DNA of 64,000 bases from Schmidtea polychroa (GCA_044892525.1 CM097887.1:107114397-107178396); one strand, 5' to 3'; shown: positions 1-64,000, counted from the first letter of the stretch. Translations and numbers: made by a program. The notes: generated from the sequence alone by a model not told the origin.

Positions 1-1369
1 CTCACCTCAAACTATTGGTATTATCCCAGGAGAGTGGATATTCCAAACGATTTCAAATTCGCAGGAGGGCCTCGAAAGCAAATGATGATAACGGTCTAAA
101 TAACCAAGGTAGATTAAAATTGGCGGAACTATGTAGAGATTATGGTTCATGTCCGAAATTGGAAAGCATTTGGATCCATGCGATCAATAGGCCATTCACT
201 GTGTTTATGGCGGGATTAGAGTTACCTGTTGAATTAGAAAAACAGTGTACTCTGGAGATATACCACGCTGATGGACGAGAACGGAATATTATGATCCAGG
301 CAGCAGCAGTTGATACCATAATCGCAGTAGAAATCTTGGATTTCAGGAAGCCATACTCTATAGTTAGCAAAAACGAGCCAACTTGGATTTACAATGTAAA
401 TAAAGTTGATATACAGCAGTGTAAATCATTTGTGAGGAAGAAGTTAACCAAAGCCGAGGAGGACGAGGCTACAATTTTCATATCGGCAGGTTTTGCCAAA
501 TCCCGAATCGAACTGAAGGAGACAATTATCCAAATCGCAATTATGGATATGAGGGGAAATAATTTATTGAGTGCGGTAGTGACTCCCAGAGACCCTGTAA
601 AACACTACCAAACGCACCAATACAAGTTAAAGGAACCTGATATTAGAGGAAACCTCGACGAAGATGATTGTTATCCTCTGATAAGATCTGCGATAAGAAA
701 ATACTTGTAGGTATTTTGCTTAAAGATCTGATCTCGGTAGCCAATCTACCAGTGCAGTGGATACTGAGTATTCGTGACCTTTCTGCAAATAAACTATTGG
801 AAACCAGAGGAGTCCCAATGATTCATGGTCATTACAGATTGGGATTCCCGACGAAAACTTTCCTGCGTACAGTTCTTGGAGAACCAAGGAATTTAGTGGT
901 CACCAATGAGGCACTGGCGATACGTGCGGTTTATTTACATTTCAGAAACGAATGGTTAGACCATATCACGAAACCCCAGGAGGAATTCATTTCCGTAACT
1001 ACAGCAGCGATAGTTGAGCAGGAAATGACGCAAAAGAGGAGATTACCCGAGCAACCATCTACATCAGGGCAACCCAAGCCTAAGAGAAAATCACCTGTGG
1101 ACTTACCACCGCCTCCAGCTATATCTATTGGAGAAGAAGATGAATATGAAACATGCGTTAGCGAAACGGAGACAGCAAAATCACCCAAACAATCATCGGG
1201 AGCTGCCTATCAGCCAAAGGATAAATCGGAAAATGCGGTCAGAAAAGAAAATCCAGAAGGAGGCAAGGTGAAAAAGATGTTAAAGAAAATATTACCCATA
1301 AAAAGACAATTTTTTCAAATTTGTCAGACTTCCCGCCAACGGAAATTCTTCAACGATGTCTTATTTTAA
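1..1369 (+). pseudogene. Unit 1 exonuclease-like gene, 5'-truncated by window edge, with an extra frameshift at ~96
   Basis: Copy of 2701..4235; GGTCTAAAT replaces GGTTATAAAT (net -1 nt); private R>W and P>L in ORF2. Confidence 0.7.
1268..1327 (+). other. Candidate 60-nt phase-0 intron near 3' end of ORF2 (present in every unit with ORF2)
   Basis: AAG|GTGAAA...TTTTTTCAAATTTGTCAG|ACT; A/T-rich; removal keeps frame (GGK|TSRQRKFFNDVLF*). No transcript evidence. Confidence 0.45.
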
Positions 1370-1690
1370 AGCTCATTGCAATACCTTTCGAATGTGGTAT
1401 AGAAATCCATATTATCAATATTATTGGTAAAGGTATTATTATTTTTTCAAAATATTATTTTTTCAAGGTCATTTATATTTTCAAGGTCAATCATATTTTC
1501 AAGGTCATATTTTAAAATTTAAATTTTTAGAGTTCCCACCAATGGAATTTATTGGCCGATGGCTAATTTTGAAGCCCACTGCAATACCTTTCGAATGACG
1601 TATAGATATTCATATTATCATTATTATTAATAAAGATATTATTTTTTCAAAATATTATTTTTCAAGGTCGTTTATTTTTTCAAGGTTCAA
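1318..1690 (+). repeat. Diverged internal direct duplication (~170-bp copies, offset ~203 bp) in the spacer; in every unit
   Basis: CAGACTTCCCGCCAACGGAAATT...TTTTAAAGCTCATTGCAATACCTTTCGAATG..GTATAGA aligns to TAGAGTTCCCACCAATGGAATTT...TTTTGAAGCCCACTGCAATACCTTTCGAATG..GTATAGA, through to TTTTCAAGGT. Confidence 0.92.
1463..1507 (+). promoter_or_regulatory. 18-bp minisatellite with three TCAAGGTCA motifs (NR5A/FTZ-F1/ERR-type site); fourth site TCAAGGTCG at 1662-1670; in every unit
   Basis: TCAAGGTCA at 1463, 1481, 1499 (period 18). Repeat is seen directly; regulatory function is inferred from the known YCAAGGYCR consensus. Confidence 0.45.
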
Positions 1691-1759
1691 AATCTGTTCA
1701 AAGCTACTGTTTTAGTCAATACGAACCAGATGAAATAATCGGTTCCATCGCCAAAAGTG

Positions 1760-2007
1760 ATGCTCATCCTATTTGAATATATGCCTGAAAGATTGAAAGA
1801 TTCAAGTTGAAAGACCTGAAATTAGAAGACAATCACAAGAAAATATTATCCGGACAATTGATGTCCGGACTGCAATACTTGCATAATTTGAATATCGCCC
1901 ACTGCAATATCAATCCAAAAGACATTTTCGATGATATGGCAGAATTAAGATTAAAGATTTCAAACTTTGGAGGACGAATAATAAAATTGCGCTTATCGTC
2001 ATATTAG
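1760..2007 (+). pseudogene. Degenerate protein kinase fragment (subdomains V-VII; CMGC/GSK3-like spacing); may extend to ~1682
   Basis: MLILFEYMPERLKD (1760-) then, after a -1 shift, QLMSGLQYLHNLNIAHCNINPKDIF...LKISNFG, matching QL..GL.YLH...I.HRDIKP.NI...LKI.DFG; no N-lobe, no APE; in-frame TAA at 1736. Confidence 0.82.
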
Positions 2008-2033
2008 AAAATGACCAGCGAGTCGAGAGATTA

Positions 2034-2700: not shown

Positions 2701-4235
2701 ATGAATTATAACAGAGAACCAAAACCACCAGTCAAAGCAAATCGACGACACCCATTGGCAACGTACAATTCCCAGACTCGAGTTGAAACTGAAGTATATA
2801 GTACATACAAAGAAGAGTACGTATACAGGTTCATCGGAACTACGGTCGCAGCAAAAATGAATCACCTCACCTCAAACTATTGGTATTATCCCAGGAGAGT
2901 GGATATTCCAAACGATTTCAAATTCGCAGGAGGGCCTCGAAAGCAAATGATGATAACGGTTATAAATAACCAAGGTAGATTAAAATTGGCGGAACTATGT
3001 AGAGATTATGGTTCATGTCCGAAATTGGAAAGCATTTGGATCCATGCGATCAATAGGCCATTCACTGTGTTTATGGCGGGATTAGAGTTACCTGTTGAAT
3101 TAGAAAAACAGTGTACTCTGGAGATATACCACGCTGATGGACGAGAACGGAATATTATGATCCAGGCAGCAGCAGTTGATACCATAATCGCAGTAGAAAT
3201 CTTGGATTTCAGGAAGCCATACTCTATAGTTAGCAAAAACGAGCCAACTTGGATTTACAATGTAAATAAAGTTGATATACAGCAGTGTAAATCATTTGTG
3301 AGGAAGAAGTTAACCAAAGCCGAGGAGGACGAGGCTACAATTTTCATATCGGCAGGTTTTGCCAAATCCCGAATCGAACTGAAGGAGACAATTATCCAAA
3401 TCGCAATTATGGATATGAGGGGAAATAATTTATTGAGTGCGGTAGTGACTCCCAGAGACCCTGTAAAACACTACCAAACGCACCAATACAAGTTAAAGGA
3501 ACCTGATATTAGAGGAAACCTCGACGAAGATGATTGTTATCCTCTGATAAGATCTGCGATAAGAAAATACTTGTAGGTATTTTGCTTAAAGATCTGATCT
3601 CGGTAGCCAATCTACCAGTGCAGCGGATACTGAGTATTCGTGACCTTTCTGCAAATAAACTATTGGAAACCAGAGGAGTCCCAATGATTCATGGTCATTA
3701 CAGATTGGGATTCCCGACGAAAACTTTCCTGCGTACAGTTCCCGGAGAACCAAGGAATTTAGTGGTCACCAATGAGGCACTGGCGATACGTGCGGTTTAT
3801 TTACATTTCAGAAACGAATGGTTAGACCATATCACGAAACCCCAGGAGGAATTCATTTCCGTAACTACAGCAGCGATAGTTGAGCAGGAAATGACGCAAA
3901 AGAGGAGATTACCCGAGCAACCATCTACATCAGGGCAACCCAAGCCTAAGAGAAAATCACCTGTGGACTTACCACCGCCTCCAGCTATATCTATTGGAGA
4001 AGAAGATGAATATGAAACATGCGTTAGCGAAACGGAGACAGCAAAATCACCCAAACAATCATCGGGAGCTGCCTATCAGCCAAAGGATAAATCGGAAAAT
4101 GCGGTCAGAAAAGAAAATCCAGAAGGAGGCAAGGTGAAAAAGATGTTAAAGAAAATATTACCCATAAAAAGACAATTTTTTCAAATTTGTCAGACTTCCC
4201 GCCAACGGAAATTCTTCAACGATGTCTTATTTTAA
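2701..4235 (+). CDS. Unit 2 (reference): unknown N-terminal domain + REX4/ISG20-like DEDDh exonuclease fold + NLS tail, split by frameshift into ORF1 (2701-3576) and ORF2 (3534-4235)
   Basis: ATG 2701 follows TTTTTAG acceptor-like site. IIQIAIMDMRGNNLLSAVVTPRDPVKHYQT...EPDI, KKILVGILLKDL, SIRDLS and NEALAIRAVYLHFRNEW match REX4-family blocks (RVSIVD..G..L....V.P..PV.DY.T, ILVGH.L.NDL, RDTS, EDARATM.LY....EW). Confidence 0.75.
3546..3599 (+). other. Stem-loop spanning the ORF1/ORF2 junction with the ORF1 stop codon in the loop; in every unit with the junction
   Basis: AGATCT(3550-55)/AGATCT(3590-95), TAAG/CTTA, AAAATAC/GTATTTT stems; loop TTGTAG 3571-3576. Confidence 0.6.
3900..3956 (+). other. 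Bipartite nuclear localisation signal in ORF2 tail
   Basis: KR-RLPEQPSTSGQP-KPKRK fits the classical KR-x(10-12)-basic cluster consensus. Confidence 0.55.
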
Positions 4236-4625
4236 AGCTCATTGCAATACCTTTCGAATGTGGTATAGAAATCCATATTATCAATATTATTGGTAAAGGT
4301 ATTATTATTTTTTCAAAATATTATTTTTTCAAGGTCATTTATATTTTCAAGGTCAATCATATTTTCAAGGTCATATTTTAAAATTTAAATTTTTAGAGTT
4401 CCCACCAATGGAATTTATTGGCCGATGGCTAATTTTGAAGCCCACTGCAATACCTTTCGAATGACGTATAGATATTCATATTATCATTATTATTAATAAA
4501 GATATTATTTTTTCAAAATATTATTTTTCAAGGTCGTTTATTTTTTCAAGGTTCAAAATCTGTTCAAAGCTACTGTTTTAGTCAATACGAACCAGATGAA
4601 ATAATCGGTTCCATCGCCAAAAGTG

Positions 4626-4873: not shown

Positions 4874-4899
4874 AAAATGACCAGCGAGTCGAGAGATTA

Positions 4900-5367
4900 G
4901 TGCTCAACCATGCTTATCTAAGTAGAAGATGGACAATCAAACCAGATACCGTGACAAAGGCGAACATTTCGTATTTGGAATTTACGGAGAGAACCGGTTG
5001 GTATATAATATATCAAGAAATAGTAAATCTAATACCTCCCACAAAAGGAGAACTAACTGGCAAAGAAGGAAAGGCTAGATTAGTGAGTATTCCTGGTTGT
5101 AAAGGAATAAAGGCTTTGAATTGGTTTAGTATCAGAAAGGTAGCGAGTGTAAACCAGCCCCGCATAAATAAATTAATTAATAATTGTAGAGTTCAAAATA
5201 CGTTAAACGGGACAACGAGAGATAAAACCTCAACTTGGTTATTCTTAATCATGATAGGGGGAGTAATTTGCATGATTTTAATTTTGATATTAACCACCCT
5301 ATGGATGCTTAGATTAAATATGCGGGATATTCGTTATTGGGAAATTATTTACGAAACCGAGGTATAG
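4900..5367 (+). CDS. ORF3 TM ORF copy (I/N allele)
   Basis: Copy of 2034..2501. Confidence 0.45.
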   Translation: MLNHAYLSRRWTIKPDTVTKANISYLEFTERTGWYIIYQEIVNLIPPTKGELTGKEGKARLVSIPGCKGIKALNWFSIRKVASVNQPRINKLINNCRVQNTLNGTTRDKTSTWLFLIMIGGVICMILILILTTLWMLRLNMRDIRYWEIIYETEV

Positions 5368-5566
5368 GGGGAAAGTCTCACCATATACTAGGAAGTGTAA
5401 ATATATATTTTATCTATTTTATATGTTATTTATATTAGTATGTAAACTAATGTGGGCTCAAATGAGCATCGGTAAAATCAGACATCAGCGTATGTCGACT
5501 TTGGTTACCCTGCGAGGGTCTATCACGAAAGTGATAAAAGCTGTTAATTATTTTATTTTTAGAAAA

Positions 5567-7101
5567 ATGAATTATAACAGAGAACCAAAACCACCAGTCA
5601 AAGCAAATCGACGACACCCATTGGCAACGTACAATTCCCAGACTCGAGTTGAAACTGAAGTATATAGTACATACAAAGAAGAGTACGTATACAGGTTCAT
5701 CGGAACTACGGTCGCAGCAAAAATGAATCACCTCACCTCAAACTATTGGTATTATCCCAGGAGAGTGGATATTCCAAACGATTTCAAATTCGCAGGAGGG
5801 CCTCGAAAGCAAATGATGATAACGGTTATAAATAACCAAGGTAGATTAAAATTGGCGGAACTATGTAGAGATTATGGTTCATGTCCGAAATTAGAAAGCA
5901 TTTGGATCCATGCGATCAATAGGCCATTCACTGTGTTTATGGCGGGATTAGAGTTACCTGTTGAATTAGAAAAACAGTGTACTCTGGAGATATACCACGC
6001 TGATGGACGAGAACGGAATATTATGATCCAGGCAGCAGCAGTTGATACCATAATCGCAGTAGAAATCTTGGATTTCAGGAAGCCATACTCTATAGTTAGC
6101 AAAAACGAGCCAACTTGGATTTACAATGTAAATAAAGTTGATATACAGCAGTGTAAATCATTTGTGAGGAAGAAGTTAACCAAAGCCGAGGAGGACGAGA
6201 CTACAATTTTCATATCGGCAGGTTTTGCCAAATCCCGAATCGAACTGAAGGAGACAATTATCCAAATCGCAATTATGGATATGAGGGGAAATAATTTATT
6301 GAGTGCGGTAGTGACTCCCAGAGACCCTGTAAAACACTACCAAACGCACCAATACAAGTTAAAGGAACCTGATATTAGAGGAAACCTCGACGAAGATGAT
6401 TGTTATCCTCTGATAAGATCTGCGATAAGAAAATACTTGTAGGTATTTTGCTTAAAGATCTGATCTCGGTAGCCAATCTACCAGTGCAGCGGATACTGAG
6501 TATTCGTGACCTTTCTGCAAATAAACTATTGGAAACCAGAGGAGTCCCAATGATTCATGGTCATTACAGATTGGGATTCCCGACGAAAACTTTCCTGCGT
6601 ACAGTTCCCGGAGAACCAAGGAATTTAGTGGTCACCAATGAGGCACTGGCGATACGTGCGGTTTATTTACATTTCAGAAACGAATGGTTAGACCATATCA
6701 CGAAACCCCAGGAGGAATTCATTTCCGTAACTACAGCAGCGATAGTTGAGCAGGAAATGACGCAAAAGAGGAGATTACCCGAGCAACCATCTACATCAGG
6801 GCAACCCAAGCCTAAGAGAAAATCACCTGTGGACTTACCACCGCCTCCAGCTATATCTATTGGAGAAGAAGATGAATATGAAACATGCGTTAGCGAAACG
6901 GAGACAGCAAAATCACCCAAACAATCATCGGGAGCTACCTATCAGCCAAAGGATAAATCGGAAAATGCGGTCAGAAAAGAAAATCCAGAAGGAGGCAAGG
7001 TGAAAAAGATGTTAAAGAAAATATTACCCATAAAAAGACAATTTTTTCAAATTTGTCAGACTTCCCGCCAACGGAAATTCTTCAACGATGTCTTATTTTA
7101 A
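5567..7101 (+). CDS. Unit 3 exonuclease-like split gene (type A with B-type EDETT marker)
   Basis: Copy of 2701..4235. Confidence 0.72.
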
Positions 7102-37603: not shown

Positions 37604-37843
37604 NNNNNNNNNNNNNNNNNNNNNNNNNNNNNNNNNNNNNNNNNNNNNNNNNNNNNNNNNNNNNNNNNNNNNNNNNNNNNNNNNNNNNNNNNNNNNNNNN
37701 NNNNNNNNNNNNNNNNNNNNNNNNNNNNNNNNNNNNNNNNNNNNNNNNNNNNNNNNNNNNNNNNNNNNNNNNNNNNNNNNNNNNNNNNNNNNNNNNNNNN
37801 NNNNNNNNNNNNNNNNNNNNNNNNNNNNNNNNNNNNNNNNNNN
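37604..37843. other. Assembly gap (240 N)
   Basis: N run; flanks correspond to unit positions 3225 and 4457. Confidence 0.99.
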
Positions 37844-38953: not shown

Positions 38954-40488
38954 ATGAATTATAACAGAGAACCAAAACCACCAGTCAAAGCAAATCGACG
39001 ACACCCATTGGCAACGTACAATTCCCAGACTCGAGTTGAAACTGAAGTATATAGTACATACAAAGAAGAGTACGTATACAGGTTCATCGGAACTACGGTC
39101 GCAGCAAAAATGAATCACCTCACCTCAAACTATTGGTATTATCCCAGGAGAGTGGATATTCCAAATGATTTCAAATTCGCAGGAGGGCCTCGAAAGCAAA
39201 TGATGATAACGGTTATAAATAACCAAGGTAGATTAAAATTGGCGGAACTATGTAGAGATTATGGTTCATGTCCGAAATTGGAAAACATTTGGATCCATGC
39301 GATCAATAGGCCATTCACTGTGTTTATGGCGGGATTAGAGTTACCTGTTGAATTAGAAAAACAGTGTACCCTGGAGATATACCACGCTGATGGACGAGAA
39401 CGGAATATTATGATCCAGGCAGCAGCAGTTGATACCATAATCGCAGTAGAAATCTTGGATTTCAGGAAGCCATACTCTATAGTTAGCAAAAACGAGCCAA
39501 CTTGGATTTACAATGTAAATAAAGTTGATATACAGCAGTGTAAATCATTTGTGAGGAAGAAGTTAACCAAAGCCGAGGAGGACGAGGCTACAATTTTCAT
39601 ATCGGCAGGTTTTGCCAAATCCCGAATCGAACTGAAGGAGACAATTATCCAAATCGCAATTATGGATATGAGGGGAAATAATTTATTGAGTGCGGTAGTG
39701 ACTCCCAGAGACCCTGTAAAACACTACCAAACGCACCAATACAAGTTAAAGGAACCTGATATTAGAGGAAACCTCGACGAAGATGATTGTTATCCTCTGA
39801 TAAGATCTGCGATAAGAAAATACTTGTAGGTATTTTGCTTAAAGATCTGATCTCGGTAGCCAATCTACCAGTGCAGCGGATACTGAGTATTCGTGACCTT
39901 TCTGCAAATAAACTATTGGAAACCAGAGGAGTCCCAATGATTCATGGTCATTACAGATTGGGATTCCCGACGAAAACTTTCCTGCGTACGGTTCCCGGAG
40001 AACCAAGGAATTTAGTGGTCACCAATGAGGCACTGGCGATACGTGCGGTTTATTTACATCTCAGAAACGAATGGTTAGACCATATCACGAAACCCCAGGA
40101 GGAATTCATTTCCGTAACTACAGCAGCGATAGTTGAGCAGGAAATGACGCAAAAGAGGAGATTACCCGAGCAACCATCTACATCAGGGCAACCCAAGCCT
40201 AAGAGAAAATCACCTGTGGACTTACCACCGCCTCCAGCTATATCTATTGGAGAAGAAGATGAATATGAAACATGCGTTAGCGAAACGGAGACAGCAAAAT
40301 CACCCAAACAATCATCGGGAGCTGCCTATCAGCCAAAGGATAAATCGGAAAATGCGGTCAGAAAAGAAAATCCAGAAGGAGGCAAGGTGAAAAAGATGTT
40401 AAAGAAAATATTACCCATAAAAAGACAATTTTTTCAAATTTGTCAGACTTCCCGCCAACGGAAATTCTTCAACGATGTCTTATTTTAA
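38954..40488 (+). CDS. Unit 15 exonuclease-like split gene (type C)
   Basis: Copy of 2701..4235 with S>N, F>L and silent changes. Confidence 0.72.
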
Positions 40489-40578
40489 AGCTCATTGCAA
40501 TACCTTTCGAATGTGGTATAGAAATCCATATTATCAATATTATTGGTAAAGATATTATTTTTTCAAAATATTATTTTT

Positions 40579-40641
40579 TCAAGGTCATTTATATTTTCAA
40601 GGTCATTTATATTTTCAAGGTCATTCATATTTTCAAGGTCA
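40579..40641 (+). repeat. Expanded 18-bp minisatellite (four TCAAGGTCA) in type C units (also units 16, 17)
   Basis: TCAAGGTCA at 40579, 40597, 40615, 40633. Confidence 0.95.
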
Positions 40642-40893
40642 TATTTTAAAATTTAAATTTTTAGAGTTCCCACCAATGGAATTTATTGGCCGATGGCTAA
40701 TTTTGAAGCCCACTGCAATACCTTTCGAATGACGTATAGATATTCATATTATCATTATTATTAATAAAGATATTATTTTTTCAAAATATTATTTTTCAAG
40801 GTCGTTTATTTTTTCAAGGTTCAAAATCTGTTCAAAGCTACTGTTTTAGTCAATACGAACCAGATGAAATAATCGGTTCCATCGCCAAAAGTG

Positions 40894-41141
40894 ATGCTCA
40901 TCCTATTTGAATATATGCCTGAAAGATTGAAAGATTCAAGTTGAAAGACCTGAAATTAGAAGACAATCACAAGAAAATATTATCCGGACAATTGATGTCC
41001 GGACTGCAATACTTGCATAATTTGAATATCGCCCACTGCAATATCAATCCAAAAGACATTTTCGATGATATGGCAGAATTAAGATTAAAGATTTCAAACT
41101 TTGGAGGACGAATAATAAAATTGCGCTTATCGTCATATTAG
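40894..41141 (+). pseudogene. Kinase fragment copy
   Basis: Copy of 1760..2007. Confidence 0.8.
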
Positions 41142-41167
41142 AAAATGACCAGCGAGTCGAGAGATTA

Positions 41168-41635
41168 GTGCTCAACCATGCTTATCTAAGTAGAAGATGG
41201 ACAATCAAACCAGATACCGTGACAAAGGCGAACATTTCGTATTTGGAATTTACGGAGAGAACCGGTTGGTATACAATATATCAAGAAATAGTAAATCTAA
41301 TACCTCCCACAAAAGGAGAACTAACTGGCAAAGAAGGAAAGGCTAGATTAGTGAGTATTCCTGGTTGTAAAGGAATAAAGGCTTTGGATTGGTTTAGTAT
41401 CAGAAAGGTAGCGAGTGTAAACCAGCCCCGCATAAATAAATTAATTAATAATTGTAGAGTTCAAAATACGTTAAACGGGACAACGAGAGATAAAACCTCA
41501 ACTTGGTTATTCTTAATCATGATAGGGGGAGTAATTTGCATGATTTTAATTTTGATATTAACCACCCTATGGATGCTTAGATTAAATATGCGGGATATTC
41601 GTTATTGGGAAATTATTTACGAAACCGAGGTATAG
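41168..41635 (+). CDS. ORF3 TM ORF copy (T/D allele)
   Basis: Copy of 2034..2501. Confidence 0.45.
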   Translation: MLNHAYLSRRWTIKPDTVTKANISYLEFTERTGWYTIYQEIVNLIPPTKGELTGKEGKARLVSIPGCKGIKALDWFSIRKVASVNQPRINKLINNCRVQNTLNGTTRDKTSTWLFLIMIGGVICMILILILTTLWMLRLNMRDIRYWEIIYETEV

Positions 41636-41834
41636 GGGGAAAGTCTCACCATATACTAGGAAGTGTAAATATATATTTTATCTATTTTATATGTTATTTA
41701 TATTAGTATGTAAACTAATGTGGGCTCAAATGAGCATCGGTAAAATCAGACATCAGCGTATGTCGACTTTGGTTACCCTGCGAGGGTCTATCACGAAAGT
41801 GATAAAAGCTGTTAATTATTTTATTTTTAGAAAA

Positions 41835-43369
41835 ATGAATTATAACAGAGAACCAAAACCACCAGTCAAAGCAAATCGACGACACCCATTGGCAACGTAC
41901 AATTCCCAGACTCGAGTTGAAACTGAAGTATATAGTACATACAAAGAAGAGTACGTATACAGGTTCATCGGAACTACGGTCGCAGCAAAAATGAATCACC
42001 TCACCTCAAACTATTGGTATTATCCCAGGAGAGTGGATATTCCAAATGATTTCAAATTCGCAGGAGGGCCTCGAAAGCAAATGATGATAACGGTTATAAA
42101 TAACCAAGGTAGATTAAAATTGGCGGAACTATGTAGAGATTATGGTTCATGTCCGAAATTGGAAAACATTTGGATCCATGCGATCAATAGGCCATTCACT
42201 GTGTTTATGGCGGGATTAGAGTTACCTGTTGAATTAGAAAAACAGTGTACCCTGGAGATATACCACGCTGATGGACGAGAACGGAATATTATGATCCAGG
42301 CAGCAGCAGTTGATACCATAATCGCAGTAGAAATCTTGGATTTCAGGAAGCCATACTCTATAGTTAGCAAAAACGAGCCAACTTGGATTTACAATGTAAA
42401 TAAAGTTGATATACAGCAGTGTAAATCATTTGTGAGGAAGAAGTTAACCAAAGCCGAGGAGGACGAGGCTACAATTTTCATATCGGCAGGTTTTGCCAAA
42501 TCCCGAATCGAACTGAAGGAGACAATTATCCAAATCGCAATTATGGATATGAGGGGAAATAATTTATTGAGTGCGGTAGTGACTCCCAGAGACCCTGTAA
42601 AACACTACGAAACGCACCAATACAAGTTAATGGAACCTGATATTAGAGGAAACCTCGACGAAGATGATTGTTATCCTCTGATAAGATCTGCGATAAGAAA
42701 ATACTTGTAGGTATTTTGCTTAAAGATCTGATCTCGGTAGCCAATCTACCAGTGCAGCGGATACTGAGTATTCGTGACCTTTCTGCAAATAAACTATTGG
42801 AAACCAGAGGAGTCCCAATGATTCATGGTCATTACAGATTGGGATTCCCGACGAAAACTTTCCTGCGTACGGTTCCCGGAGAACCAAGGAATTTAGTGGT
42901 CACCAATGAGGCACTGGCGATACGTGCGGTTTATTTACATCTCAGAAACGAATGGTTAGACCATATCACGAAACCCCAGGAGGAATTCATTTCCGTAACT
43001 ACAGCAGCGATAGTTGAGCAGGAAATGACGCAAAAGAGGAGATTACCCGAGCAACCATCTACATCAGGGCAACCCAAGCCTAAGAGAAAATCACCTGTGG
43101 ACTTACCACCGCCTCCAGCTATATCTATTGGAGAAGAAGATGAATATGAAACATGCGTTAGCGAAACGGAGACAGCAAAATCACCCAAACAATCATCGGG
43201 AGCTGCCTATCAGCCAAAGGATAAATCGGAAAATGCGGTCAGAAAAGAAAATCCAGAAGGAGGCAAGGTGAAAAAGATGTTAAAGAAAATATTACCCATA
43301 AAAAGACAATTTTTTCAAATTTGTCAGACTTCCAGCCAACGGAAATTCTTCAACGATGTCTTATTTTAA
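41835..43369 (+). CDS. Unit 16 exonuclease-like split gene (type C)
   Basis: C markers plus private Q>E, K>M; R>S shared with unit 17. Confidence 0.72.
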
Positions 43370-43774
43370 AGCTCATTGCAATACCTTTCGAATGTGGTAT
43401 AGAAATCCATATTATCAATATTATTGGTAAAGATATTATTTTTTCAAAATATTATTTTTTCAAGGTCATTTATATTTTCAAGGTCATTTATATTTTCAAG
43501 GTCATTCATATTTTCAAGGTCATATTTTAAAATTTAAATTTTTAGAGTTCCCACCAATGGAATTTATTGGCCGATGGCTAATTTTGAAGCCCACTGCAAT
43601 ACCTTTCGAATGACGTATAGATATTCATATTATCATTATTATTAATAAAGATATTATTTTTTCAAAATATTATTTTTCAAGGTCGTTTATTTTTTCAAGG
43701 TTCAAAATCTGTTCAAAGCTACTGTTTTAGTCAATACGAACCAGATGAAATAATCGGTTCCATCGCCAAAAGTG

Positions 43775-44022
43775 ATGCTCATCCTATTTGAATATATGCC
43801 TGAAAGATTGAAAGATTCAAGTTGAAAGACCTGAAATTAGAAGACAATCACAAGAAAATATTATCCGGACAATTGATGTCCGGACTGCAATACTTGCATA
43901 ATTTGAATATCGCCCACTGCAATATCAATCCAAAAGACATTTTCGATGATATGGCAGAATTAAGATTAAAGATTTCAAACTTTGGAGGACGAATAATAAA
44001 ATTGCGCTTATCGTCATATTAG
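43775..44022 (+). pseudogene. Kinase fragment copy
   Basis: Copy of 1760..2007. Confidence 0.8.
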
Positions 44023-44048
44023 AAAATGACCAGCGAGTCGAGAGATTA

Positions 44049-44516
44049 GTGCTCAACCATGCTTATCTAAGTAGAAGATGGACAATCAAACCAGATACCG
44101 TGACAAAGGCGAACATTTCGTATTTGGAATTTACGGAGAGAACCGGTTGGTATACAATATATCAAGAAATAGTAAATCTAATACCTCCCACAAAAGGAGA
44201 ACTAACTGGCAAAGAAGGAAAGGCTAGATTAGTGAGTATTCCTGGTTGTAAAGGAATAAAGGCTTTGGATTGGTTTAGTATCAGAAAGGTAGCGAGTGTA
44301 AACCAGCCCCGCATAAATAAATTAATTAATAATTGTAGAGTTCAAAATACGTTAAACGGGACAACGAGAGATAAAACCTCAACTTGGTTATTCTTAATCA
44401 TGATAGGGGGAGTAATTTGCACGATTTTAATTTTGATATTAACCACCCTATGGATGCTTAGATTAAATATGCGGGATATTCGTTATTGGGAAATTATTTA
44501 CGAAACCGAGGTATAG
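44049..44516 (+). CDS. ORF3 TM ORF copy (T/D allele, M>T in TM)
   Basis: Copy of 2034..2501. Confidence 0.45.
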   Translation: MLNHAYLSRRWTIKPDTVTKANISYLEFTERTGWYTIYQEIVNLIPPTKGELTGKEGKARLVSIPGCKGIKALDWFSIRKVASVNQPRINKLINNCRVQNTLNGTTRDKTSTWLFLIMIGGVICTILILILTTLWMLRLNMRDIRYWEIIYETEV

Positions 44517-44715
44517 GGGGAAAGTCTCACCATATACTAGGAAGTGTAAATATATATTTTATCTATTTTATATGTTATTTATATTAGTATGTAAACTAAT
44601 GTGGGCTCAAATGAGCATCGGTAAAATCAGACATCAGCGTATGTCGACTTTGGTTACCCTGCGAGGGTCTATCACGAAAGTGATAAAAGCTGTTAATTAT
44701 TTTATTTTTAGAAAA

Positions 44716-46250
44716 ATGAATTATAACAGAGAACCAAAACCACCAGTCAAAGCAAATCGACGACACCCATTGGCAACGTACAATTCCCAGACTCGAGTTG
44801 AAACTGAAGTATATAGTACATACAAAGAAGAGTACGTATACAGGTTCATCGGAACTACGGTCGCAGCAAAAATGAATCACCTCACCTCAAACTATTGGTA
44901 TTATCCCAGGAGAGTGGATATTCCAAATGATTTCAAATTCGCAGGAGGGCCTCGAAAGCAAATGATGATAACGGTTATAAATAACCAAGGTAGATTAAAA
45001 TTGGCGGAACTATGTAGAGATTATGGTTCATGTCCGAAATTGGAAAACATTTGGATCCATGCGATCAATAGGCCATTCACTGTGTTTATGGCGGGATTAG
45101 AGTTACCTGTTGAATTAGAAAAACAGTGTACCCTGGAGATATACCACGCTGATGGACGAGAACGGAATATTATGATCCAGGCAGCAGCAGTTGATACCAT
45201 AATCGCAGTAGAAATCTTGGATTTCAGGAAGCCATACTCTATAGTTAGCAAAAACGAGCCAACTTGGATTTACAATGTAAATAAAGTTGATATACAGCAG
45301 TGTAAATCATTTGTGAGGAAGAAGTTAACCAAAGCCGAGGAGGACGAGGCTACAATTTTCATATCGGCAGGTTTTGCCAAATCCCGAATCGAACTGAAGG
45401 AGACAATTATCCAAATCGCAATTATGGATATGAGGGGAAATAATTTATTGAGTGCGGTAGTGACTCCCAGAGACCCTGTAAAACACTACCAAACGCACCA
45501 ATACAAGTTAAAGGAACCTGATATTAGAGGAAACCTCGACGAAGATGATTGTTATCCTCTGATAAGATCTGCGATAAGAAAATACTTGTAGGTATTTTGC
45601 TTAAAGATCTGATCTCGGTAGCCAATCTACCAGTGCAGCGGATACTGAGTATTCGTGACCTTTCTGCAAATAAACTATTGGAAACCAGAGGAGTCCCAAT
45701 GATTCATGGTCATTACAGATTGGGATTCCCGACGAAAACTTTCCTGCGTACGGTTCCCGGAGAACCAAGGAATTTAGTGGTCACCAATGAGGCACTGGCG
45801 ATACGTGCGGTTTATTTACATCTCAGAAACGAATGGTTAGACCATATCACGAAACCCCAGGAGGAATTCATTTCCGTAACTACAGCAGCGATAGTTGAGC
45901 AGGAAATGACGCAAAAGAGGAGATTACCCGAGCAACCATCTACATCAGGGCAACCCAAGCCTAAGAGAAAATCACCTGTGGACTTACCACCGCCTCCAGC
46001 TATATCTATTGGAGAAGAAGATGAATATGAAACATGCGTTAGCGAAACGGAGACAGCAAAATCACCCAAACAATCATCGGGAGCTGCCTATCAGCCAAAG
46101 GATAAATCGGAAAATGCGGTCAGAAAAGAAAATCCAGAAGGAGGCAAGGTGAAAAAGATGTTAAAGAAAATATTACCCATAAAAAGACAATTTTTTCAAA
46201 TTTGTCAGACTTCCAGCCAACGGAAATTCTTCAACGATGTCTTATTTTAA
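44716..46250 (+). CDS. Unit 17 exonuclease-like split gene (type C)
   Basis: Copy of 2701..4235, C markers. Confidence 0.72.
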
Positions 46251-46655
46251 AGCTCATTGCAATACCTTTCGAATGTGGTATAGAAATCCATATTATCAAT
46301 ATTATTGGTAAAGATATTATTTTTTCAAAATATTATTTTTTCAAGGTCATTTATATTTTCAAGGTCATTTATATTTTCAAGGTCATTCATATTTTCAAGG
46401 TCATATTTTAAAATTTAAATTTTTAGAGTTCCCACCAATGGAATTTATTGGCCGATGGCTAATTTTGAAGCCCACTGCAATACCTTTCGAATGACGTATA
46501 GATATTCATATTATCATTATTATTAATAAAGATATTATTTTTTCAAAATATTATTTTTCAAGGTCGTTTATTTTTTCAAGGTTCAAAATCTGTTCAAAGC
46601 TACTGTTTTAGTCAATACGAACCAGATGAAATAATCGGTTCCATCGCCAAAAGTG

Positions 46656-46903
46656 ATGCTCATCCTATTTGAATATATGCCTGAAAGATTGAAAGATTCA
46701 AGTTGAAAGACCTGAAATTAGAAGACAATCACAAGAAAATATTATCCGGACAATTGATGTCCGGACTGCAATACTTGCATAATTTGAATATCGCCCACTG
46801 CAATATCAATCCAAAAGACATTTTCGATGATATGGCAGAATTAAGATTAAAGATTTCAAACTTTGGAGGACGAATAATAAAATTGCGCTTATCGTCATAT
46901 TAG
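46656..46903 (+). pseudogene. Kinase fragment copy
   Basis: Copy of 1760..2007. Confidence 0.8.
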
Positions 46904-46929
46904 AAAATGACCAGCGAGTCGAGAGATTA

Positions 46930-47397
46930 GTGCTCAACCATGCTTATCTAAGTAGAAGATGGACAATCAAACCAGATACCGTGACAAAGGCGAACATTTC
47001 GTATTTGGAATTTACGGAGAGAACCGGTTGGTATACAATATATCAAGAAATAGTAAATCTAATACCTCCCACAAAAGGAGAACTAACTGGCAAAGAAGGA
47101 AAGGCTAGATTAGTGAGTATTCCTGGTTGTAAAGGAATAAAGGATTTGAATTGGTTTAGTATCAGAAAGGTAGCGAGTGTAAACCAGCCCCGCATAAATA
47201 AATTAATTAATAATTGTAGAGTTCAAAATACGTTAAACGGGACAACGAGAGATAAAACCTCAACTTGGTTATTCTTAATCATGATAGGGGGAGTAATTTG
47301 CATGATTTTAATTTTGATATTAACCACCCTATGGATGCTTAGATTAAATATGCGGGATATTCGTTATTGGGAAATTATTTACGAAACCGAGGTATAG
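46930..47397 (+). CDS. ORF3 TM ORF copy (recombinant T/N allele, private A>D)
   Basis: WYTIYQ but KDLNWF. Confidence 0.45.
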   Translation: MLNHAYLSRRWTIKPDTVTKANISYLEFTERTGWYTIYQEIVNLIPPTKGELTGKEGKARLVSIPGCKGIKDLNWFSIRKVASVNQPRINKLINNCRVQNTLNGTTRDKTSTWLFLIMIGGVICMILILILTTLWMLRLNMRDIRYWEIIYETEV

Positions 47398-47596
47398 GGG
47401 GAAAGTCTCACCATATACTAGGAAGTGTAAATATATATTTTATCTATTTTATATGTTATTTATATTAGTATGTAAACTAATGTGGGCTCAAATGAGCATC
47501 GGTAAAATCAGACATCAGCGTATGTCGACTTTGGTTACCCTGCGAGGGTCTATCACGAAAGTGATAAAAGCTGTTAATTATTTTATTTTTAGAAAA

Positions 47597-49130
47597 ATGA
47601 ATTATAACAGAGAACCAAAACCACCAGTCAAAGCAAATCGACGACACCCATTGGCAACGTACAATTCCCAGACTCGAGTTGAAACTGAAGTATATAGTAC
47701 ATACAAAGAAGAGTACGTATACAGGTTCATCGGAACTACGGTCGCAGCAAAAATGAATCACCTCACCTCAAACTATTGGTATTATCCCAGGAGAGTGGAT
47801 ATTCCAAACGATTTCAAATTCGCAGGAGGGCCTCGAAAGCAAATGATGATAACGGTCTAAATAACCAAGGTAGATTAAAATTGGCGGAACTATGTAGAGA
47901 TTATGGTTCATGTCCGAAATTGGAAAGCATTTGGATCCATGCGATCAATAGGCCATTCACTGTGTTTATGGCGGGATTAGAGTTACCTGTTGAATTAGAA
48001 AAACAGTGTACTCTGGAGATATACCACGCTGATGGACGAGAACGGAATATTATGATCCAGGCAGCAGCAGTTGATACCATAATCGCAGTAGAAATCTTGG
48101 ATTTCAGGAAGCCATACTCTATAGTTAGCAAAAACGAGCCAACTTGGATTTACAATGTAAATAAAGTTGATATACAGCAGTGTAAATCATTTGTGAGGAA
48201 GAAGTTAACCAAAGCCGAGGAGGACGAGGCTACAATTTTCATATCGGCAGGTTTTGCCAAATCCCGAATCGAACTGAAGGAGACAATTATCCAAATCGCA
48301 ATTATGGATATGAGGGGAAATAATTTATTGAGTGCGGTAGTGACTCCCAGAGACCCTGTAAAACACTACCAAACGCACCAATACAAGTTAAAGGAACCTG
48401 ATATTAGAGGAAACCTCGACGAAGATGATTGTTATCCTCTGATAAGATCTGCGATAAGAAAATACTTGTAGGTATTTTGCTTAAAGATCTGATCTCGGTA
48501 GCCAATCTACCAGTGCAGCGGATACTGAGTATTCGTGACCTTTCTGCAAATAAACTATTGGAAACCAGAGGAGTCCCAATGATTCATGGTCATTACAGAT
48601 TGGGATTCCCGACGAAAACTTTCCTGCGTACAGTTCCCGGAGAACCAAGGAATTTAGTGGTCACCAATGAGGCACTGGCGATACGTGCGGTTTATTTACA
48701 TTTCAGAAACGAATGGTTAGACCATATCACGAAACCCCAGGAGGAATTCATTTCCGTAACTACAGCAGCGATAGTTGAGCAGGAAATGACGCAAAAGAGG
48801 AGATTACCCGAGCAACCATCTACATCAGGGCAACCCAAGCCTAAGAGAAAATCACCTGTGGACTTACCACCGCCTCCAGCTATATCTATTGGAGAAGAAG
48901 ATGAATATGAAACATGCGTTAGCGAAACGGAGACAGCAAAATCACCCAAACAATCATCGGGAGCTGCCTATCAGCCAAAGGATAAATCGGAAAATGCGGT
49001 CAGAAAAGAAAATCCAGAAGGAGGCAAGGTGAAAAAGATGTTAAAGAAAATATTACCCATAAAAAGACAATTTTTTCAAATTTGTCAGACTTCCCGCCAA
49101 CGGAAATTCTTCAACGATGTCTTATTTTAA
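47597..49130 (+). pseudogene. Unit 18 exonuclease-like gene with extra frameshift at 47857 (premature TAA 47858-47860)
   Basis: Same GGTCTAAAT lesion as unit 1. Confidence 0.72.
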
Positions 49131-61232: not shown

Positions 61233-61258
61233 AAAATGACCAGCGAGTCGAGAGATTA

Positions 61259-61726
61259 GTGCTCAACCATGCTTATCTAAGTAGAAGATGGACAATCAAA
61301 CCAGATACCGTGACAAAGGCGAACATTTCGTATTTGGAATTTACGGAGAGAACCGGTTGGTATACAATATATCAAGAAATAGTAAATCTAATACCTCCCA
61401 CAAAAGGAGAACTAACTGGCAAAGAAGGAAAGGCTAGATTAGTGAGTATTCCTGGTTGTAAAGGAATAAAGGCTTTGGATTGGTTTAGTATCAGAAAGGT
61501 AGCGAGTGTAAACCAGCCCCGCATAAATAAATTAATTAATAATTGTAGAGTTCAAAATACGTTAAACGGGACAACGAGAGATAAAACCTCAACTTGGTTA
61601 TTCTTAATCATGATAGGGGGAGTAATTTGCATGATTTTAATTTTGATATTAACCACCCTATGGATGCTTAGATTAAATATGCGGGATATTCGTTATTGGG
61701 AAATTATTTACGAAACCGAGGTATAG
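61259..61726 (+). CDS. ORF3 TM ORF copy (T/D allele)
   Basis: Copy of 2034..2501. Confidence 0.45.
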   Translation: MLNHAYLSRRWTIKPDTVTKANISYLEFTERTGWYTIYQEIVNLIPPTKGELTGKEGKARLVSIPGCKGIKALDWFSIRKVASVNQPRINKLINNCRVQNTLNGTTRDKTSTWLFLIMIGGVICMILILILTTLWMLRLNMRDIRYWEIIYETEV

Positions 61727-61925
61727 GGGGAAAGTCTCACCATATACTAGGAAGTGTAAATATATATTTTATCTATTTTATATGTTATTTATATTAGTAT
61801 GTAAACTAATGTGGGCTCAAATGAGCATCGGTAAAATCAGACATCAGCGTATGTCGACTTTGGTTACCCTGCGAGGGTCTATCACGAAAGTGATAAAAGC
61901 TGTTAATTATTTTATTTTTAGAAAA

Positions 61926-63460
61926 ATGAATTATAACAGAGAACCAAAACCACCAGTCAAAGCAAATCGACGACACCCATTGGCAACGTACAATTCCCAG
62001 ACTCGAGTTGAAACTGAAGTATATAGTACATACAAAGAAGAGTACGTATACAGGTTCATCGGAACTACGGTCGCAGCAAAAATGAATCACCTCACCTCAA
62101 ACTATTGGTATTATCCCAGGAGAGTGGATATTCCAAACGATTTCAAATTCGCAGGAGGGCCTCGAAAGCAAATGATGATAACGGTTATAAATAACCGAGG
62201 TAGATTAAAATTGGCGGAACTATGTAGAGATTATGGTTCATGTCCGAAATTGGAAAGCATTTGGATCCATGCGATCAATAGGCCATTCACTGTGTTTATG
62301 GCGGGATTAGAGTTACCTGTTGAATTAGAAAAACAGTGTACTCTGGAGATATACCACGCTGATGGACGAGAACGGAATATTATGATCCAGGCAGCAGCAG
62401 TTGATACCATAATCGCAGTAGAAATCTTGGATTTCAGGAAGCCATACTCTATAGTTAGCAAAAACGAGCCAACTTGGATTTACAATGTAAATAAAGTTGA
62501 TATACAGCAGTGTAAATCATTTGTGAGGAAGAAGTTAACCAAAGCCGAGGAGGACGAGGCTACAATTTTCATATCGGCAGGTTTTGCCAAATCCCGAATC
62601 GAACTGAAGGAGACAATTATCCAAATCGCAATTATGGATATGAGGGGAAATAATTTATTGAGTGCGGTAGTGACTCCCAGAGACCCTGTAAAACACTACC
62701 AAACGCACCAATACAAGTTAAAGGAACCTGATATTAGAGGAAACCTCGACGAAGATGATTGTTATCCTCTGATAAGATCTGCGATAAGAAAATACTTGTA
62801 GGTATTTTGCTTAAAGATCTGATCTCGGTAGCCAATCTACCAGTGCAGCGGATACTGAGTATTCGTGACCTTTCTGCAAATAAACTATTGGAAACCAGAG
62901 GAGTCCCAATGATTCATGGTCATTACAGATTGGGATTCCCGACGAAAACTTTCCTGCGTACAGTTCCCGGAGAACCAAGGAATTTAGTGGTCACCAATGA
63001 GGCACTGGCGATACGTGCGGTTTATTTACATTTCAGAAACGAATGGTTAGACCATATCACGAAACCCCAGGAGGAATTCATTTCCGTAACTACAGCAGCG
63101 ATAGTTGAGCAGGAAATGACGCAAAAGAGGAGATTACCCGAGCAACCATCTACATCAGGGCAACCCAAGCCTAAGAGAAAATCACCTGTGGACTTACCAC
63201 CGCCTCCAGCTATATCTATTGGAGAAGAAGATGAATATGAAACATGCGTTAGCGAAACGGAGACAGCAAAATCACCCAAACAATCATCGGGAGCTGCCTA
63301 TCAGCCAAAGGATAAATCGGAAAATGCGGTCAGAAAAGAAAATCCAGAAGGAGGCAAGGTGAAAAAGATGTTAAAGAAAATATTACCCATAAAAAGACAA
63401 TTTTTTCAAGTTTGTCAGACTTCCCGCCAACGGAAATTCTTCAACGATGTCTTATTTTAA
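61926..63460 (+). CDS. Unit 23 exonuclease-like split gene (type D)
   Basis: Copy of 2701..4235. Confidence 0.72.
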
Positions 63461-63850
63461 AGCTCATTGCAATACCTTTCGAATGTGGTATAGAAATCCA
63501 TATTATCAATATTATTGGTAAAGGTATTATTATTTTTTCAAAATATTATTTTTTCAAGGTCATTTATATTTTCAAGGTCAATCATATTTTCAAGGTCATA
63601 TTTTAAAATTTAAATTTTTAGAGTTCCCACCAATGGAATTTATTGGCCGATGGCTAATTTTGAAGCCCACTGCAATACCTTTCGAATGACGTATAGATAT
63701 TCATATTATCATTATTATTAATAAAGATATTATTTTTTCAAAATATTATTTTTCAAGGTCGTTTATTTTTTCAAGGTTCAAAATCTGTTCAAAGCTACTG
63801 TTTTAGTCAATACGAACCAGATGAAATAATCGGTTCCATCGCCAAAAGTG

Positions 63851-64000
63851 ATGCTCATCCTATTTGAATATATGCCTGAAAGATTGAAAGATTCAAGTTG
63901 AAAGACCTGAAATTAGAAGACAATCACAAGAAAATATTATCCGGACAATTGATGTCCGGACTGCAATACTTGCATAATTTGAATATCGCCCACTGCAATA
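63851..64000 (+). pseudogene. Kinase fragment copy, truncated by window end
   Basis: Copy of 1760..1909. Confidence 0.78.

What the first reader, a model, noticed from the sequence alone, without database searches (positions are those of the whole stretch)
1..64000. Recently amplified chimeric cassette: pseudo-exonuclease + kinase relic + TM ORF + nuclear-receptor motif cluster, in >=22 tandem copies
Seen: a ~2.87 kb unit made of three unrelated coding relics, all on the + strand, plus a motif-rich spacer, with near-identical copies over at least 64 kb. It matches no standard tandem gene class (rDNA, 5S, SL, histone) and has no transposase, RT or Rep motifs that I can see. Established: ampliconic arrays of gene-derived units are typical of genetic-conflict loci, e.g. 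Drosophila Stellate/Su(Ste), where a kinase-subunit-derived array is silenced by a paralogous small-RNA-producing array. Inference: this could be a selfish or driver-type amplicon, a small-RNA source against parental kinase/exonuclease genes, a rolling-circle (Helitron-type) capture product, or a neutral gene-derived macrosatellite.
Basis: partly seen in the sequence, partly recalled or inferred. Interest (0 to 1): 0.85.

Follow-up and report, generated by a model that had tools for sequence, protein, structure and literature searches.

The report
Macrosatellite built from retroelement fragments
The window is one long tandem array of a 2.87-kb unit stitched together from the tail end of a giant virus-like (Burro-type Gypsy) retroelement, a dead MAP-kinase gene scrap and a common minisatellite; it looks like decaying satellite DNA born from a transposon, a known kind of thing, not a new gene system.

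Summary
There are 23 unit starts with periods of 2864, 2866 or 2881 bp. The 21 full units differ at 0-41 positions. The tandem junction and an array-private segment appear in runs from three studies.

The N gap is not continuous. The left flank stops at unit position 360 and the right resumes at about 1607 of another unit variant.

The interpretation needs correcting on one point. The TM ORF and the "pseudo-exonuclease" are not unrelated relics.
- ORF A plus ORF B is a frame-broken copy of a 430-640 aa protein family. The family has a jelly-roll-like N-domain and an ISG20-like DEDDh domain.
- In public contigs this gene lies 3' of a gag / env-like / RT / integrase polyprotein that ends in a TM tail.
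- Read depth shows the TM-to-exonuclease block is a dispersed, diverged family.
- The MAPK-like kinase relic is private to the array.
- The TCAAGGTCA "nuclear-receptor cluster" is the core of an 18-bp minisatellite far more abundant than the array.

Differences among copies look neutral: 18 nonsynonymous to 7 synonymous, plus new 1-bp indels. Only one of eight RNA runs holds the private segment, at low depth.

Best reading: a chimeric, transposon-derived macrosatellite, amplified and homogenised by unequal exchange. Neighbouring windows of this scan noted the same array.

The parts
1..64000 (+). Tandem array: 23 unit starts, 21 complete units of 2864, 2866 or 2881 bp, running off both window ends
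   Evidence: junction contigs in X1, X2 and X5
37604..37843 (.). Assembly gap (240 N). It joins unit position 360 of one variant to position 1607 of the 2881-bp variant, so it is neither continuous nor in phase
39119..47761 (+). Sub-array of three 2881-bp units (u15-u17) with one extra 18-bp minisatellite copy and about 10 private substitutions
4184..4575 (+). Spacer of a representative unit: two copies (4184-4386 and 4387-4575; 87% mean column identity in the alignment, 77% over 142 nt without gaps) of a roughly 200-bp element. Each ends in 18-bp repeats with core TTTTCAAGGTCA
   Evidence: 100-1000 times higher read depth
4576..4899 (+). MAPK-like protein-kinase relic (subdomains about IV-VII). 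HRD and DFG are degenerate, there are internal frame breaks, and it is cut off after the DFG position. This segment is private to the array
   Evidence: a single identical lowest-depth contig 4506-4908 in X1 and X2
4900..5367 (+). 155-aa ORF: the C-terminal tail of a type-I membrane protein (N-glycosylation site, TM helix, short tail). Read as the end of the retroelement's second surface protein
   Evidence: synteny in L003 and L006; diverged copies in reads. No sequence similarity was found
5368..5566 (+). Intergenic stretch with a T-rich tract plus AG (splice-acceptor-like) just before the ATG, as in relatives L001 and L004
5567..6442 (+). ORF A (291 aa): jelly-roll-like N-terminal domain plus the first half of an ISG20-like DEDDh domain whose catalytic residues are replaced
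6400..6442 (+). Overlap of ORF A and ORF B: the frame break in the middle of the exonuclease domain, present in every copy
   Evidence: a length difference at this place in other family copies
6400..7101 (+). ORF B (233 aa, -1 frame relative to A): second half of the ISG20-like domain plus an acidic/basic tail. Homology to other family copies stops near 7038
   Evidence: loose ends at 7038

Best explanation
The window is part of a macrosatellite whose 2.87-kb founder unit was a chimera of three sources.

(1) About 2.1 kb comes from the 3' accessory region of a Burro-like giant Gypsy (endogenous-retrovirus-like) element. It comprises the TM tail of the element's second surface protein, the intergenic stretch, and its last gene. 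That gene is a jelly-roll plus ISG20-like pseudo-exonuclease. The shared break in every copy implies it was already frame-broken in the founder.

(2) Two copies of a roughly 200-bp element carry an 18-bp minisatellite that is very abundant elsewhere in the genome.

(3) About 0.3-0.4 kb is a fragment of a MAPK-like kinase gene.

The unit holds no LTR, gag or pol and cannot move by itself. It was multiplied head-to-tail by unequal exchange, gene conversion or replication slippage (inferred). It is kept homogeneous by the same processes and otherwise decays neutrally. It most likely makes no functional protein.

Shown: array, chimeric anatomy, homology, retroelement context of relatives, dispersed versus private parts, neutral pattern. 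Inferred: amplification mechanism, lack of function.
For: Array. Periodicity and near-identity. The junction contig appears in runs from three studies.

Homology.
- ORF A has 28 relatives, all single ORFs when intact.
- ORF A matches P0001 residues 3-265 (6e-44) and ORF B matches residues 272-371 (4e-14).
- tblastx shows the unit changes frame where L001 and L002 do not.
- The family profile hits ISG20L2 (7e-22) and ISG20 (2e-10). The model of P0001 superposes on ISG20 with TM 0.81.
- Catalytic D-x-E, D and H-x4-D are kept in P0009/10/16/18/19/21 and lost in the window copy and P0001/3/4/5.

Retroelement context.
- P0009 and P0030 lie downstream of a polyprotein called at 3700 aa (the largest open frame inside L003 is 3006 aa). 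It carries zf-CCHC, Monjiviricetes_fusion, RVT_1, RNaseH and rve, and it ends in a TM tail.
- In L006 a TM-tailed ORF directly precedes the gene.
- In L001 and L005 the ORF is followed within about 100-220 nt by TGTTGGGG. That is the LTR start motif reported in earlier notes of this scan.

Reads.
- Region 4908-7038 has many 85-99% identical contigs and raised depth.
- Region 4506-4908 is one identical contig of lowest depth in X1 and X2. In X5 it is one near-identical contig.
- The minisatellite region is 100-1000 times deeper.

Neutrality. 18 nonsynonymous to 7 synonymous differences, dN/dS about 0.7, not different from 1 (p = 0.47). New 1-bp indels occur in ORF A (u01, u18), the TM ORF and the kinase relic (u13).

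Concerted evolution. In run X5 the single array-private contig carries fixed differences from the window, including a 13-nt length difference.

Expression. The private segment is held by only 1 of 8 RNA-labelled runs of the species, at depth about 5.
Against: - The parent retroelement copy in this genome was not retrieved. The link rests on 25-32% identical relatives in public contigs, on synteny and on read-depth logic.
- The TM ORF has no detectable sequence relative.
- With only 25 coding substitutions, the neutrality test has little power.
- ORF A alone (291 aa, intact in most units) could still be translated.
- Absence of small RNAs or of chromatin function was not tested.
- Contig depth is not a calibrated copy number.
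Confidence: 0.72

Rival explanations
1. The array is a small-RNA (piRNA) source locus. Transcripts of the retroelement-derived block would feed PIWI proteins that silence Burro-like elements, and perhaps the parental kinase gene. This would be analogous to Su(Ste) or flamenco-type clusters.
For: - About 2.1 kb of each unit is 85-99% similar to many dispersed retroelement copies, which would be suitable targets.
- One RNA-labelled run holds parts of the unit, including the private segment.
- Planarian PIWI proteins are known to control transposons (PMC8532177, title and abstract only).
Against: - Seven other RNA-labelled runs of the same species hold none of the private segment.
- The depth in X8 is about 5 and could be DNA carry-over.
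- No small-RNA data were examined.
- All relics are in one orientation, so antisense RNA would need minus-strand transcription, for which there is no evidence.
Confidence: 0.12
2. The array is a dosage-amplified protein-coding family. ORF A (jelly-roll domain plus half an exonuclease domain) and/or the TM ORF would be expressed from many copies, for instance as a dominant-negative restriction factor against the parent retroelement.
For: - ORF A is open in 19 of 21 complete units, with a splice-acceptor-like tract before its ATG as in intact relatives.
- The pseudo-exonuclease subclade keeps long intact ORFs elsewhere, so the protein has some non-catalytic use.
Against: - The domain is cut in the middle by the frame break in every copy.
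- Differences among copies are about as often nonsynonymous as chance predicts, and include fresh frameshifts.
- Evidence of RNA is weak.
Confidence: 0.05
3. The amplification went through a circular or rolling-circle intermediate rather than unequal exchange. This could be a Helitron-type capture, or an extrachromosomal circle replicated and re-integrated.
For: - Runs of fully identical units: u06 and u09-u12.
- The unit is a patchwork of unrelated fragments, as Helitron captures often are.
Against: - No Rep/helicase or any mobilisation enzyme in the unit.
- Neighbouring units are more alike than distant ones, and variant blocks (2864, 2866, 2881) are contiguous, as local unequal exchange predicts.
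- Helitron ends were not specifically searched for.
Confidence: 0.07
4. The array is an assembly artefact: the true locus has one or two copies.
For: - There is an assembly gap inside the array with a phase jump.
- Several units are letter-for-letter identical.
Against: - Contigs that cross the unit-to-unit junction occur in X1, X2 and X5.
- The array-private contig has 7-25 times the depth of the thinnest diverged family contigs in the same runs.
- Units carry ordered, distinct variants.
Confidence: 0.02

Closest known systems
Tandem repeats / satellites derived from LTR retrotransposons (for example maize CRM1TR and CRM4TR; Sharma et al. 2013, PMC3648361; review PMC12628747)
   Same: A head-to-tail array whose monomer is an internal or 3' piece of a Ty3/Gypsy element, without a complete element. 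Homogenisation is local and variant blocks are distinct. The proposed origin is illegitimate recombination followed by unequal exchange or gene conversion.
   Different: Here the monomer is much longer (2.87 kb) and includes coding accessory genes (TM tail, pseudo-exonuclease) rather than LTR/UTR. It is also chimeric, with a host kinase fragment and a foreign minisatellite element. Chromosomal role (centromeric or not) is unknown.
Burro / GYPSM1 giant Gypsy-like LTR retroelements of planarians (Grohme et al. 2018; Arkhipova and Yushenova 2019, PMC6431247)
   Same: Relatives of the unit's main gene sit at the 3' end of elements with a gag / in-frame env-like fusion protein / pol polyprotein and extra ORFs. 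This is the architecture described for Burro-like proviruses.
   Different: The unit has no LTR, gag, protease, RT or integrase, so it is a fragment and not an element. The review does not list an ISG20-like exonuclease among Burro motifs.
ISG20 / ISG20L2 / REX4 DEDDh 3'-5' exonucleases
   Same: Same fold by profile (7yw5 at 7e-22, 1wlj at 2e-10) and by model superposition (TM 0.80-0.81).
   Different: The window copy and its nearest relatives have lost the D-x-E, D and H-x4-D residues. They carry an extra roughly 170-aa N-terminal jelly-roll-like domain and a long tail. The window copy is also frame-broken.
Drosophila Stellate / Su(Ste) ampliconic conflict arrays
   Same: A tandem array containing a kinase-related gene fragment, highly homogeneous.
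   Different: No paired target array, sex linkage or small RNAs are shown. The kinase piece is a minor, decayed passenger, not the core of the unit.

Membership tests
Transposon-derived satellite / macrosatellite | Head-to-tail tandem copies of one monomer, many copies | tested here: met
   23 unit starts; periods 2864-2881 bp; junction contigs in three runs
Transposon-derived satellite / macrosatellite | The monomer is homologous to part of a transposable element but is not a complete element | tested here: met
   The ORF A/B family lies 3' of a gag-env-pol polyprotein. The unit lacks RT, integrase and LTR ends.
Transposon-derived satellite / macrosatellite | Concerted evolution: copies within the array are more alike than copies between strains or loci | tested here: met
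   0-41 differences within the array. There are fixed differences, including a 13-nt indel, in the single private contig of run X5. Strain identity of X5 is not known.
Burro-like giant Gypsy LTR retroelement (as an element) | LTRs, gag, protease-RT-RNase H-integrase | tested here: not met
   No such ORFs or Pfam hits in the unit. No TGTTGG...CCAACA ends.
ISG20/REX4-like DEDDh exonuclease | DEDDh (DnaQ-like) fold | tested here: met
   Tested for the family: profile against PDB, Pfam RNase_T in 6 of 18 members, Foldseek TM 0.81 to ISG20. The window copy aligns over the domain in two frames.
ISG20/REX4-like DEDDh exonuclease | Catalytic D-x-E, D, and H-x4-D residues | tested here: not met
   All are replaced in the window copy and in P0001/3/4/5. 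They are kept in P0009/10/16/18/19/21.
Eukaryotic protein kinase | Complete catalytic domain with HRD and DFG motifs | tested here: not met
   Only subdomains about IV-VII are present. HRD reads H-C-N and DFG reads N-F-G. The Pfam score of 25.9 is below the cut-off of 31.7, and there are internal frame breaks.
Stellate/Su(Ste)-type conflict amplicon | Paired target and suppressor arrays, small RNAs, sex or germline linkage | not testable with these tools
   No small-RNA or sex-specific data were available. Only weak RNA presence was seen.
Helitron capture | Rep/helicase or Helitron termini flanking the captured fragments | tested here: inconclusive
   No Rep/Hel ORF. Termini were not searched for, and the array ends lie outside the window.
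Standard tandem gene arrays (rDNA, 5S, SL RNA, snRNA, tRNA, histone) | The unit contains the corresponding RNA or histone gene | tested here: not met
   No Rfam match at E <= 1 and no tRNA. No histone Pfam hit.

The most novel reading that the evidence does not exclude
The array is not junk but a domesticated piece of a Burro-like provirus. It would act either as a dedicated piRNA-generating trap that keeps the giant retroelements silent in planarian stem cells, or as a (peri)centromeric macrosatellite seeded by the retroelement. The amplified truncated ORF A might act as a decoy.
Probability: 0.1. Interest if true: 0.6.

Novelty: new member of a known kind. Interest (0 to 1): 0.33.

Why it matters
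The array is a clean, datable example of how satellite DNA is born. A single illegitimate junction between a retroelement's 3' end, a host gene scrap and a minisatellite was amplified to at least 22 copies in this window. Unverified notes on neighbouring windows suggest well over 50.

It also exposes a gene family that appears undescribed. The family fuses a jelly-roll domain to an ISG20-like (pseudo)exonuclease and is carried as the last gene of giant virus-like Gypsy elements. ISG20 is an antiviral nuclease in vertebrates, so the family may be worth study in its own right.

For genome annotation, these ORFs should be masked as repeat-derived pseudogenes, not called as genes.

Tried and rejected
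- TRF returned nothing because its longest period is 500. Periodicity was measured by script instead.
- Pfam on the unit's ORFs gave only the partial kinase hit.
- Word-index protein searches with ORF A, ORF B and the TM ORF found nothing. Only the exhaustive HMMER search found relatives.
- The single-sequence AlphaFold model of ORF A was useless, with pLDDT 33.
- Exact look-up of the 339-aa ORF in public assemblies found nothing on record.
- The Atlas gave weak leads only.
- Comparing the TM ORF with the TM tails in L003 and L006 showed no sequence similarity. That link therefore rests on synteny and read depth.
- LTR hallmarks (TGTTGG/CCAACA, tRNA-type primer site, polypurine tract next to an LTR start) were not found in the unit.
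- Programmed -1 ribosomal frameshifting between ORF A and ORF B was considered. My own reading of the letters found no X-XXY-YYZ slippery site in the 43-nt overlap. Other copies of the family differ in length exactly at this place. It is therefore a mutation, not a signal.
- A multi-unit higher-order repeat (u01-u05 against u18-u22) was considered. The in-register comparison is no better than the shifted one, apart from a 1-bp deletion shared by u01 and u18.
- Copy number could not be calibrated, because the whole window is repeat and read laying allows only one call.
Full report
**1. The observation**

A 30-nt anchor from the first unit recurs 23 times. Its spacings are 2864, 2866 and 2881 bp, once 2865, and 1875 across the gap. 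Five other 16-mers give the same periods.

MAFFT of the 21 complete units gives 2885 columns, of which 58 vary. Pairwise differences run from 0 to 41. Units u06, u09, u10, u11 and u12 are identical. Units u15-u17 form a 2881-bp variant with one extra 18-bp repeat and about ten private substitutions. Variant types sit in contiguous blocks.

TRF reported nothing only because its longest period is 500. GC content is 0.34-0.38, with constant positive GC and AT skew on the + strand. Rfam at E <= 1 and ARAGORN find nothing, so this is not an rDNA, 5S, SL, snRNA or tRNA array.

**2. The gap**

The 360 bases left of the N run are identical to the start of the preceding unit type. The 1275 bases to the right are identical to the tail of the 2881-bp variant and begin at its position 1607.

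At least about 1.25 kb of a unit, plus an unknown number of whole units, is represented by 240 N. The two sides also belong to different variants. Nothing is continuous or in frame across the gap, and I did not try to fill it.

**3. Anatomy of a unit (coordinates of the unit from 4184 to 7101)**

*Spacer, 4184-4575.* This holds two copies of a roughly 200-bp element. Mean column identity in the alignment is 87%, or 77% over 142 nt without gaps. Each copy ends in 18-bp repeats with core TTTTCAAGGTCA.

TCAAGGTCA occurs 70 times in the window against 0.5 expected. All but one occurrence are these repeats, at 3-4 per unit.

*Kinase relic, 4576-4899.* One frame reads a typical hinge (..LILFEYMPE..). 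Another reads the catalytic loop through the DFG position, with HRD and DFG degenerate. The relic then stops.

Pfam Pkinase gives E = 8e-6, below the curated cut-off. The best solved relatives are MAPK6 and p38.

*TM ORF, 4900-5367.* This 155-aa ORF ends in a glycosylation site, a TM helix and a short tail.

*Intergenic stretch and ORF A/B.* The intergenic stretch 5368-5566 has a T-tract plus AG just before an ATG. ORF A (5567-6442, 291 aa) and ORF B (6400-7101, 233 aa) overlap by 43 nt, with B in the -1 frame.

**4. What ORF A and ORF B are**

Word-index searches found nothing. The exhaustive HMMER search found 28 relatives, best E = 1e-35. Intact relatives are single ORFs of 430-640 aa.

ORF A aligns to P0001 residues 3-265 (6e-44) and ORF B to residues 272-371 (4e-14). 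In tblastx the unit switches frame where L001 and L002 stay in one. Every copy in the window therefore carries the same frame break in the middle of the gene.

A profile of the family hits ISG20L2 (7yw5, 7e-22), ISG20 (1wlj, 2e-10) and SDN1. Six of 18 members hit Pfam RNase_T.

An AlphaFold model of the intact relative P0001, built with the family alignment, has high confidence over residues 12-370. Its C-terminal domain superposes on ISG20 with TM 0.81. Its N-terminal domain of about 170 residues weakly resembles double-stranded beta-helix (AlkB/PHD-like) folds, with TM about 0.45.

In the alignment, P0009/10/16/18/19/21 keep D-x-E, D and H-x4-D. The window copy and P0001/3/4/5 have lost them. 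An old pseudo-exonuclease subclade therefore exists with intact ORFs, and the window's copy is a broken member of it.

**5. Where that gene lives**

P0009 and its near-twin P0030 lie on 14-17 kb contigs immediately downstream of a large polyprotein. The gene call there runs 3700 aa, and the largest open frame inside locus L003 is 3006 aa. It carries zf-CCHC, two Monjiviricetes_fusion hits, RVT_1, RNase H and integrase.

The polyprotein itself ends in a signal-peptide-to-TM surface protein. This is the gag / in-frame env / pol layout described for Burro-like giant Gypsy proviruses of planarians (PMC6431247).

In L006 an ORF ending in a TM helix and a basic tail directly precedes the gene. In L001 and L005 the ORF is followed within about 100-220 nt by TGTTGGGG. 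Earlier notes of this scan give that motif as the LTR start in this genome.

L001 and L004 also have the T-tract plus AG just before the ATG, as the window does.

So a TM tail, a short gap and then the exonuclease-like gene is the 3' end of such elements. The unit reproduces that order.

**6. Reads**

The four runs laid on one unit came from three studies.

- All three DNA-type runs contain a contig that goes back 2866 bp, which is the tandem junction.
- Region 4506-4908 (end of spacer plus kinase relic) is covered by one contig per run with the lowest depth: 22, 366 and 598. That contig is identical to the window in X1 and X2.
- Region about 4830-7038 carries extra depth and hundreds of contigs at 85-99% identity.
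- At 7038 several contigs continue with other sequence.
- The minisatellite region reaches depths of 2e5 to 9e5.

My reading is that the TM-to-exonuclease block belongs to a dispersed, diverged family. The kinase piece is private to this array. The minisatellite element is a separate, hugely abundant repeat.

In X5 the only private contig differs from the window by fixed changes. These include a 13-nt length difference that coincides with one of the kinase relic's frame breaks. Whole-array fixation of this kind is typical of concerted evolution.

At the ORF A/B break, many other family copies differ in length (table 4). This fits an ordinary mutation in the founder unit.

**7. Selection and expression**

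Among the 21 units, the ORFs show 18 nonsynonymous and 7 synonymous differences. dN/dS is about 0.7 and not different from 1 (p = 0.47). New 1-bp indels break ORF A in u01 and u18, and hit the TM ORF and the kinase relic in u13.

Substitution density is similar in ORFs and spacer. The private segment is held by one of eight RNA-labelled runs of the species (share 0.34, depth about 5) and by none of the other seven. This is weak evidence of transcription and could be DNA carry-over.

**8. Interpretation**

The founder unit arose by illegitimate joining of three pieces:
- a retroelement 3' fragment whose exonuclease-like gene already carried the break;
- a duplicated minisatellite-bearing element;
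- a MAPK-like gene fragment.

It was then multiplied and homogenised locally. Contiguous variant blocks and runs of identical units fit unequal exchange or gene conversion. A rolling-circle step cannot be excluded.

Retrotransposon-derived tandem repeats are a known kind (PMC3648361; PMC12628747). Large nested tandem-repeat regions are reported in planarian assemblies (PMC11410931). Earlier notes guess a planarian, and the Burro-like relatives fit that.

**9. Relation to earlier notes of this scan**

The scan has seen this array before, on the two neighbouring windows. Their notes put it from about 62 kb before to about 40 kb after this window, which I did not verify.

One neighbour's reader independently called the TM ORF a 'retroelement-linked membrane-protein tail'. 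Several notes on other pieces of the genome describe Gypsy elements carrying an ISG20-like (pseudo)exonuclease. That was the lead I tested with public contigs.

**10. Limits**

- The parental element and the parental kinase gene in this genome were not retrieved, because no tool searches the host genome.
- Copy number is uncalibrated.
- Small RNAs, chromatin state and sex or germline linkage are untested.
The raw read laying row is cited only by call number. My first notebook entry copied that row before I had recognised the proviral origin.

Noticed in passing
P0001 model residues 12-180 (relative of window 5567-6250): The N-terminal domain of the retroelement accessory protein family folds as a beta jelly-roll. 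It gives weak Foldseek matches to AlkB/PHD-type 2OG oxygenases (TM about 0.45). No obvious H-x-D...H triad appears in the alignment. A jelly-roll fused to an ISG20-like domain seems undescribed for Burro-like elements.
   Followed up: partly
Alignment A2 (relatives of window 5567-7101): The family splits into members that keep the DEDDh catalytic residues (P0009/10/16/18/19/21) and members that lost them but keep long intact ORFs (P0001/3/4/5). The dead version therefore appears to be selected for a non-catalytic role.
   Followed up: partly
window 4290-4410 (and each unit): The 18-bp TTTTCAAGGTCA minisatellite and about 40 bp after it have 100-1000 times the read depth of the rest of the unit in all runs, and other copies diverge after 4408. 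This is a very abundant dispersed repeat or satellite in its own right.
   Followed up: partly
window 4604-4656: In run X5 the only contig covering the array-private kinase relic has two substitutions and a 13-nt length difference relative to the window, at full depth. This looks like array-wide fixed differences between strains (concerted evolution).
   Followed up: no
window 96 and 47857: Units u01 and u18, 17 units apart and on opposite sides of the gap, share a substitution plus a 1-bp deletion that breaks ORF A. This could reflect a long-range duplication, gene conversion or a scaffolding redundancy.
   Followed up: partly
window 5540-5566; L001:35-60; L004:85-100: A T-rich tract ending in AG lies just upstream of the start codon in the window and in two relatives. 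This suggests the accessory gene is expressed from a spliced subgenomic mRNA of the retroelement.
   Followed up: no
L001:1940-1972; L005:1720-1740: The exonuclease-like ORF is followed by TGTTGGGG, preceded in L005 by a purine-rich tract. This looks like a polypurine tract plus LTR start, making this the last gene before the 3' LTR.
   Followed up: partly
window 57182-57190: Unit u21 has one extra TCAAGGTCA outside the minisatellite, created by a single substitution inside ORF B.
   Followed up: no
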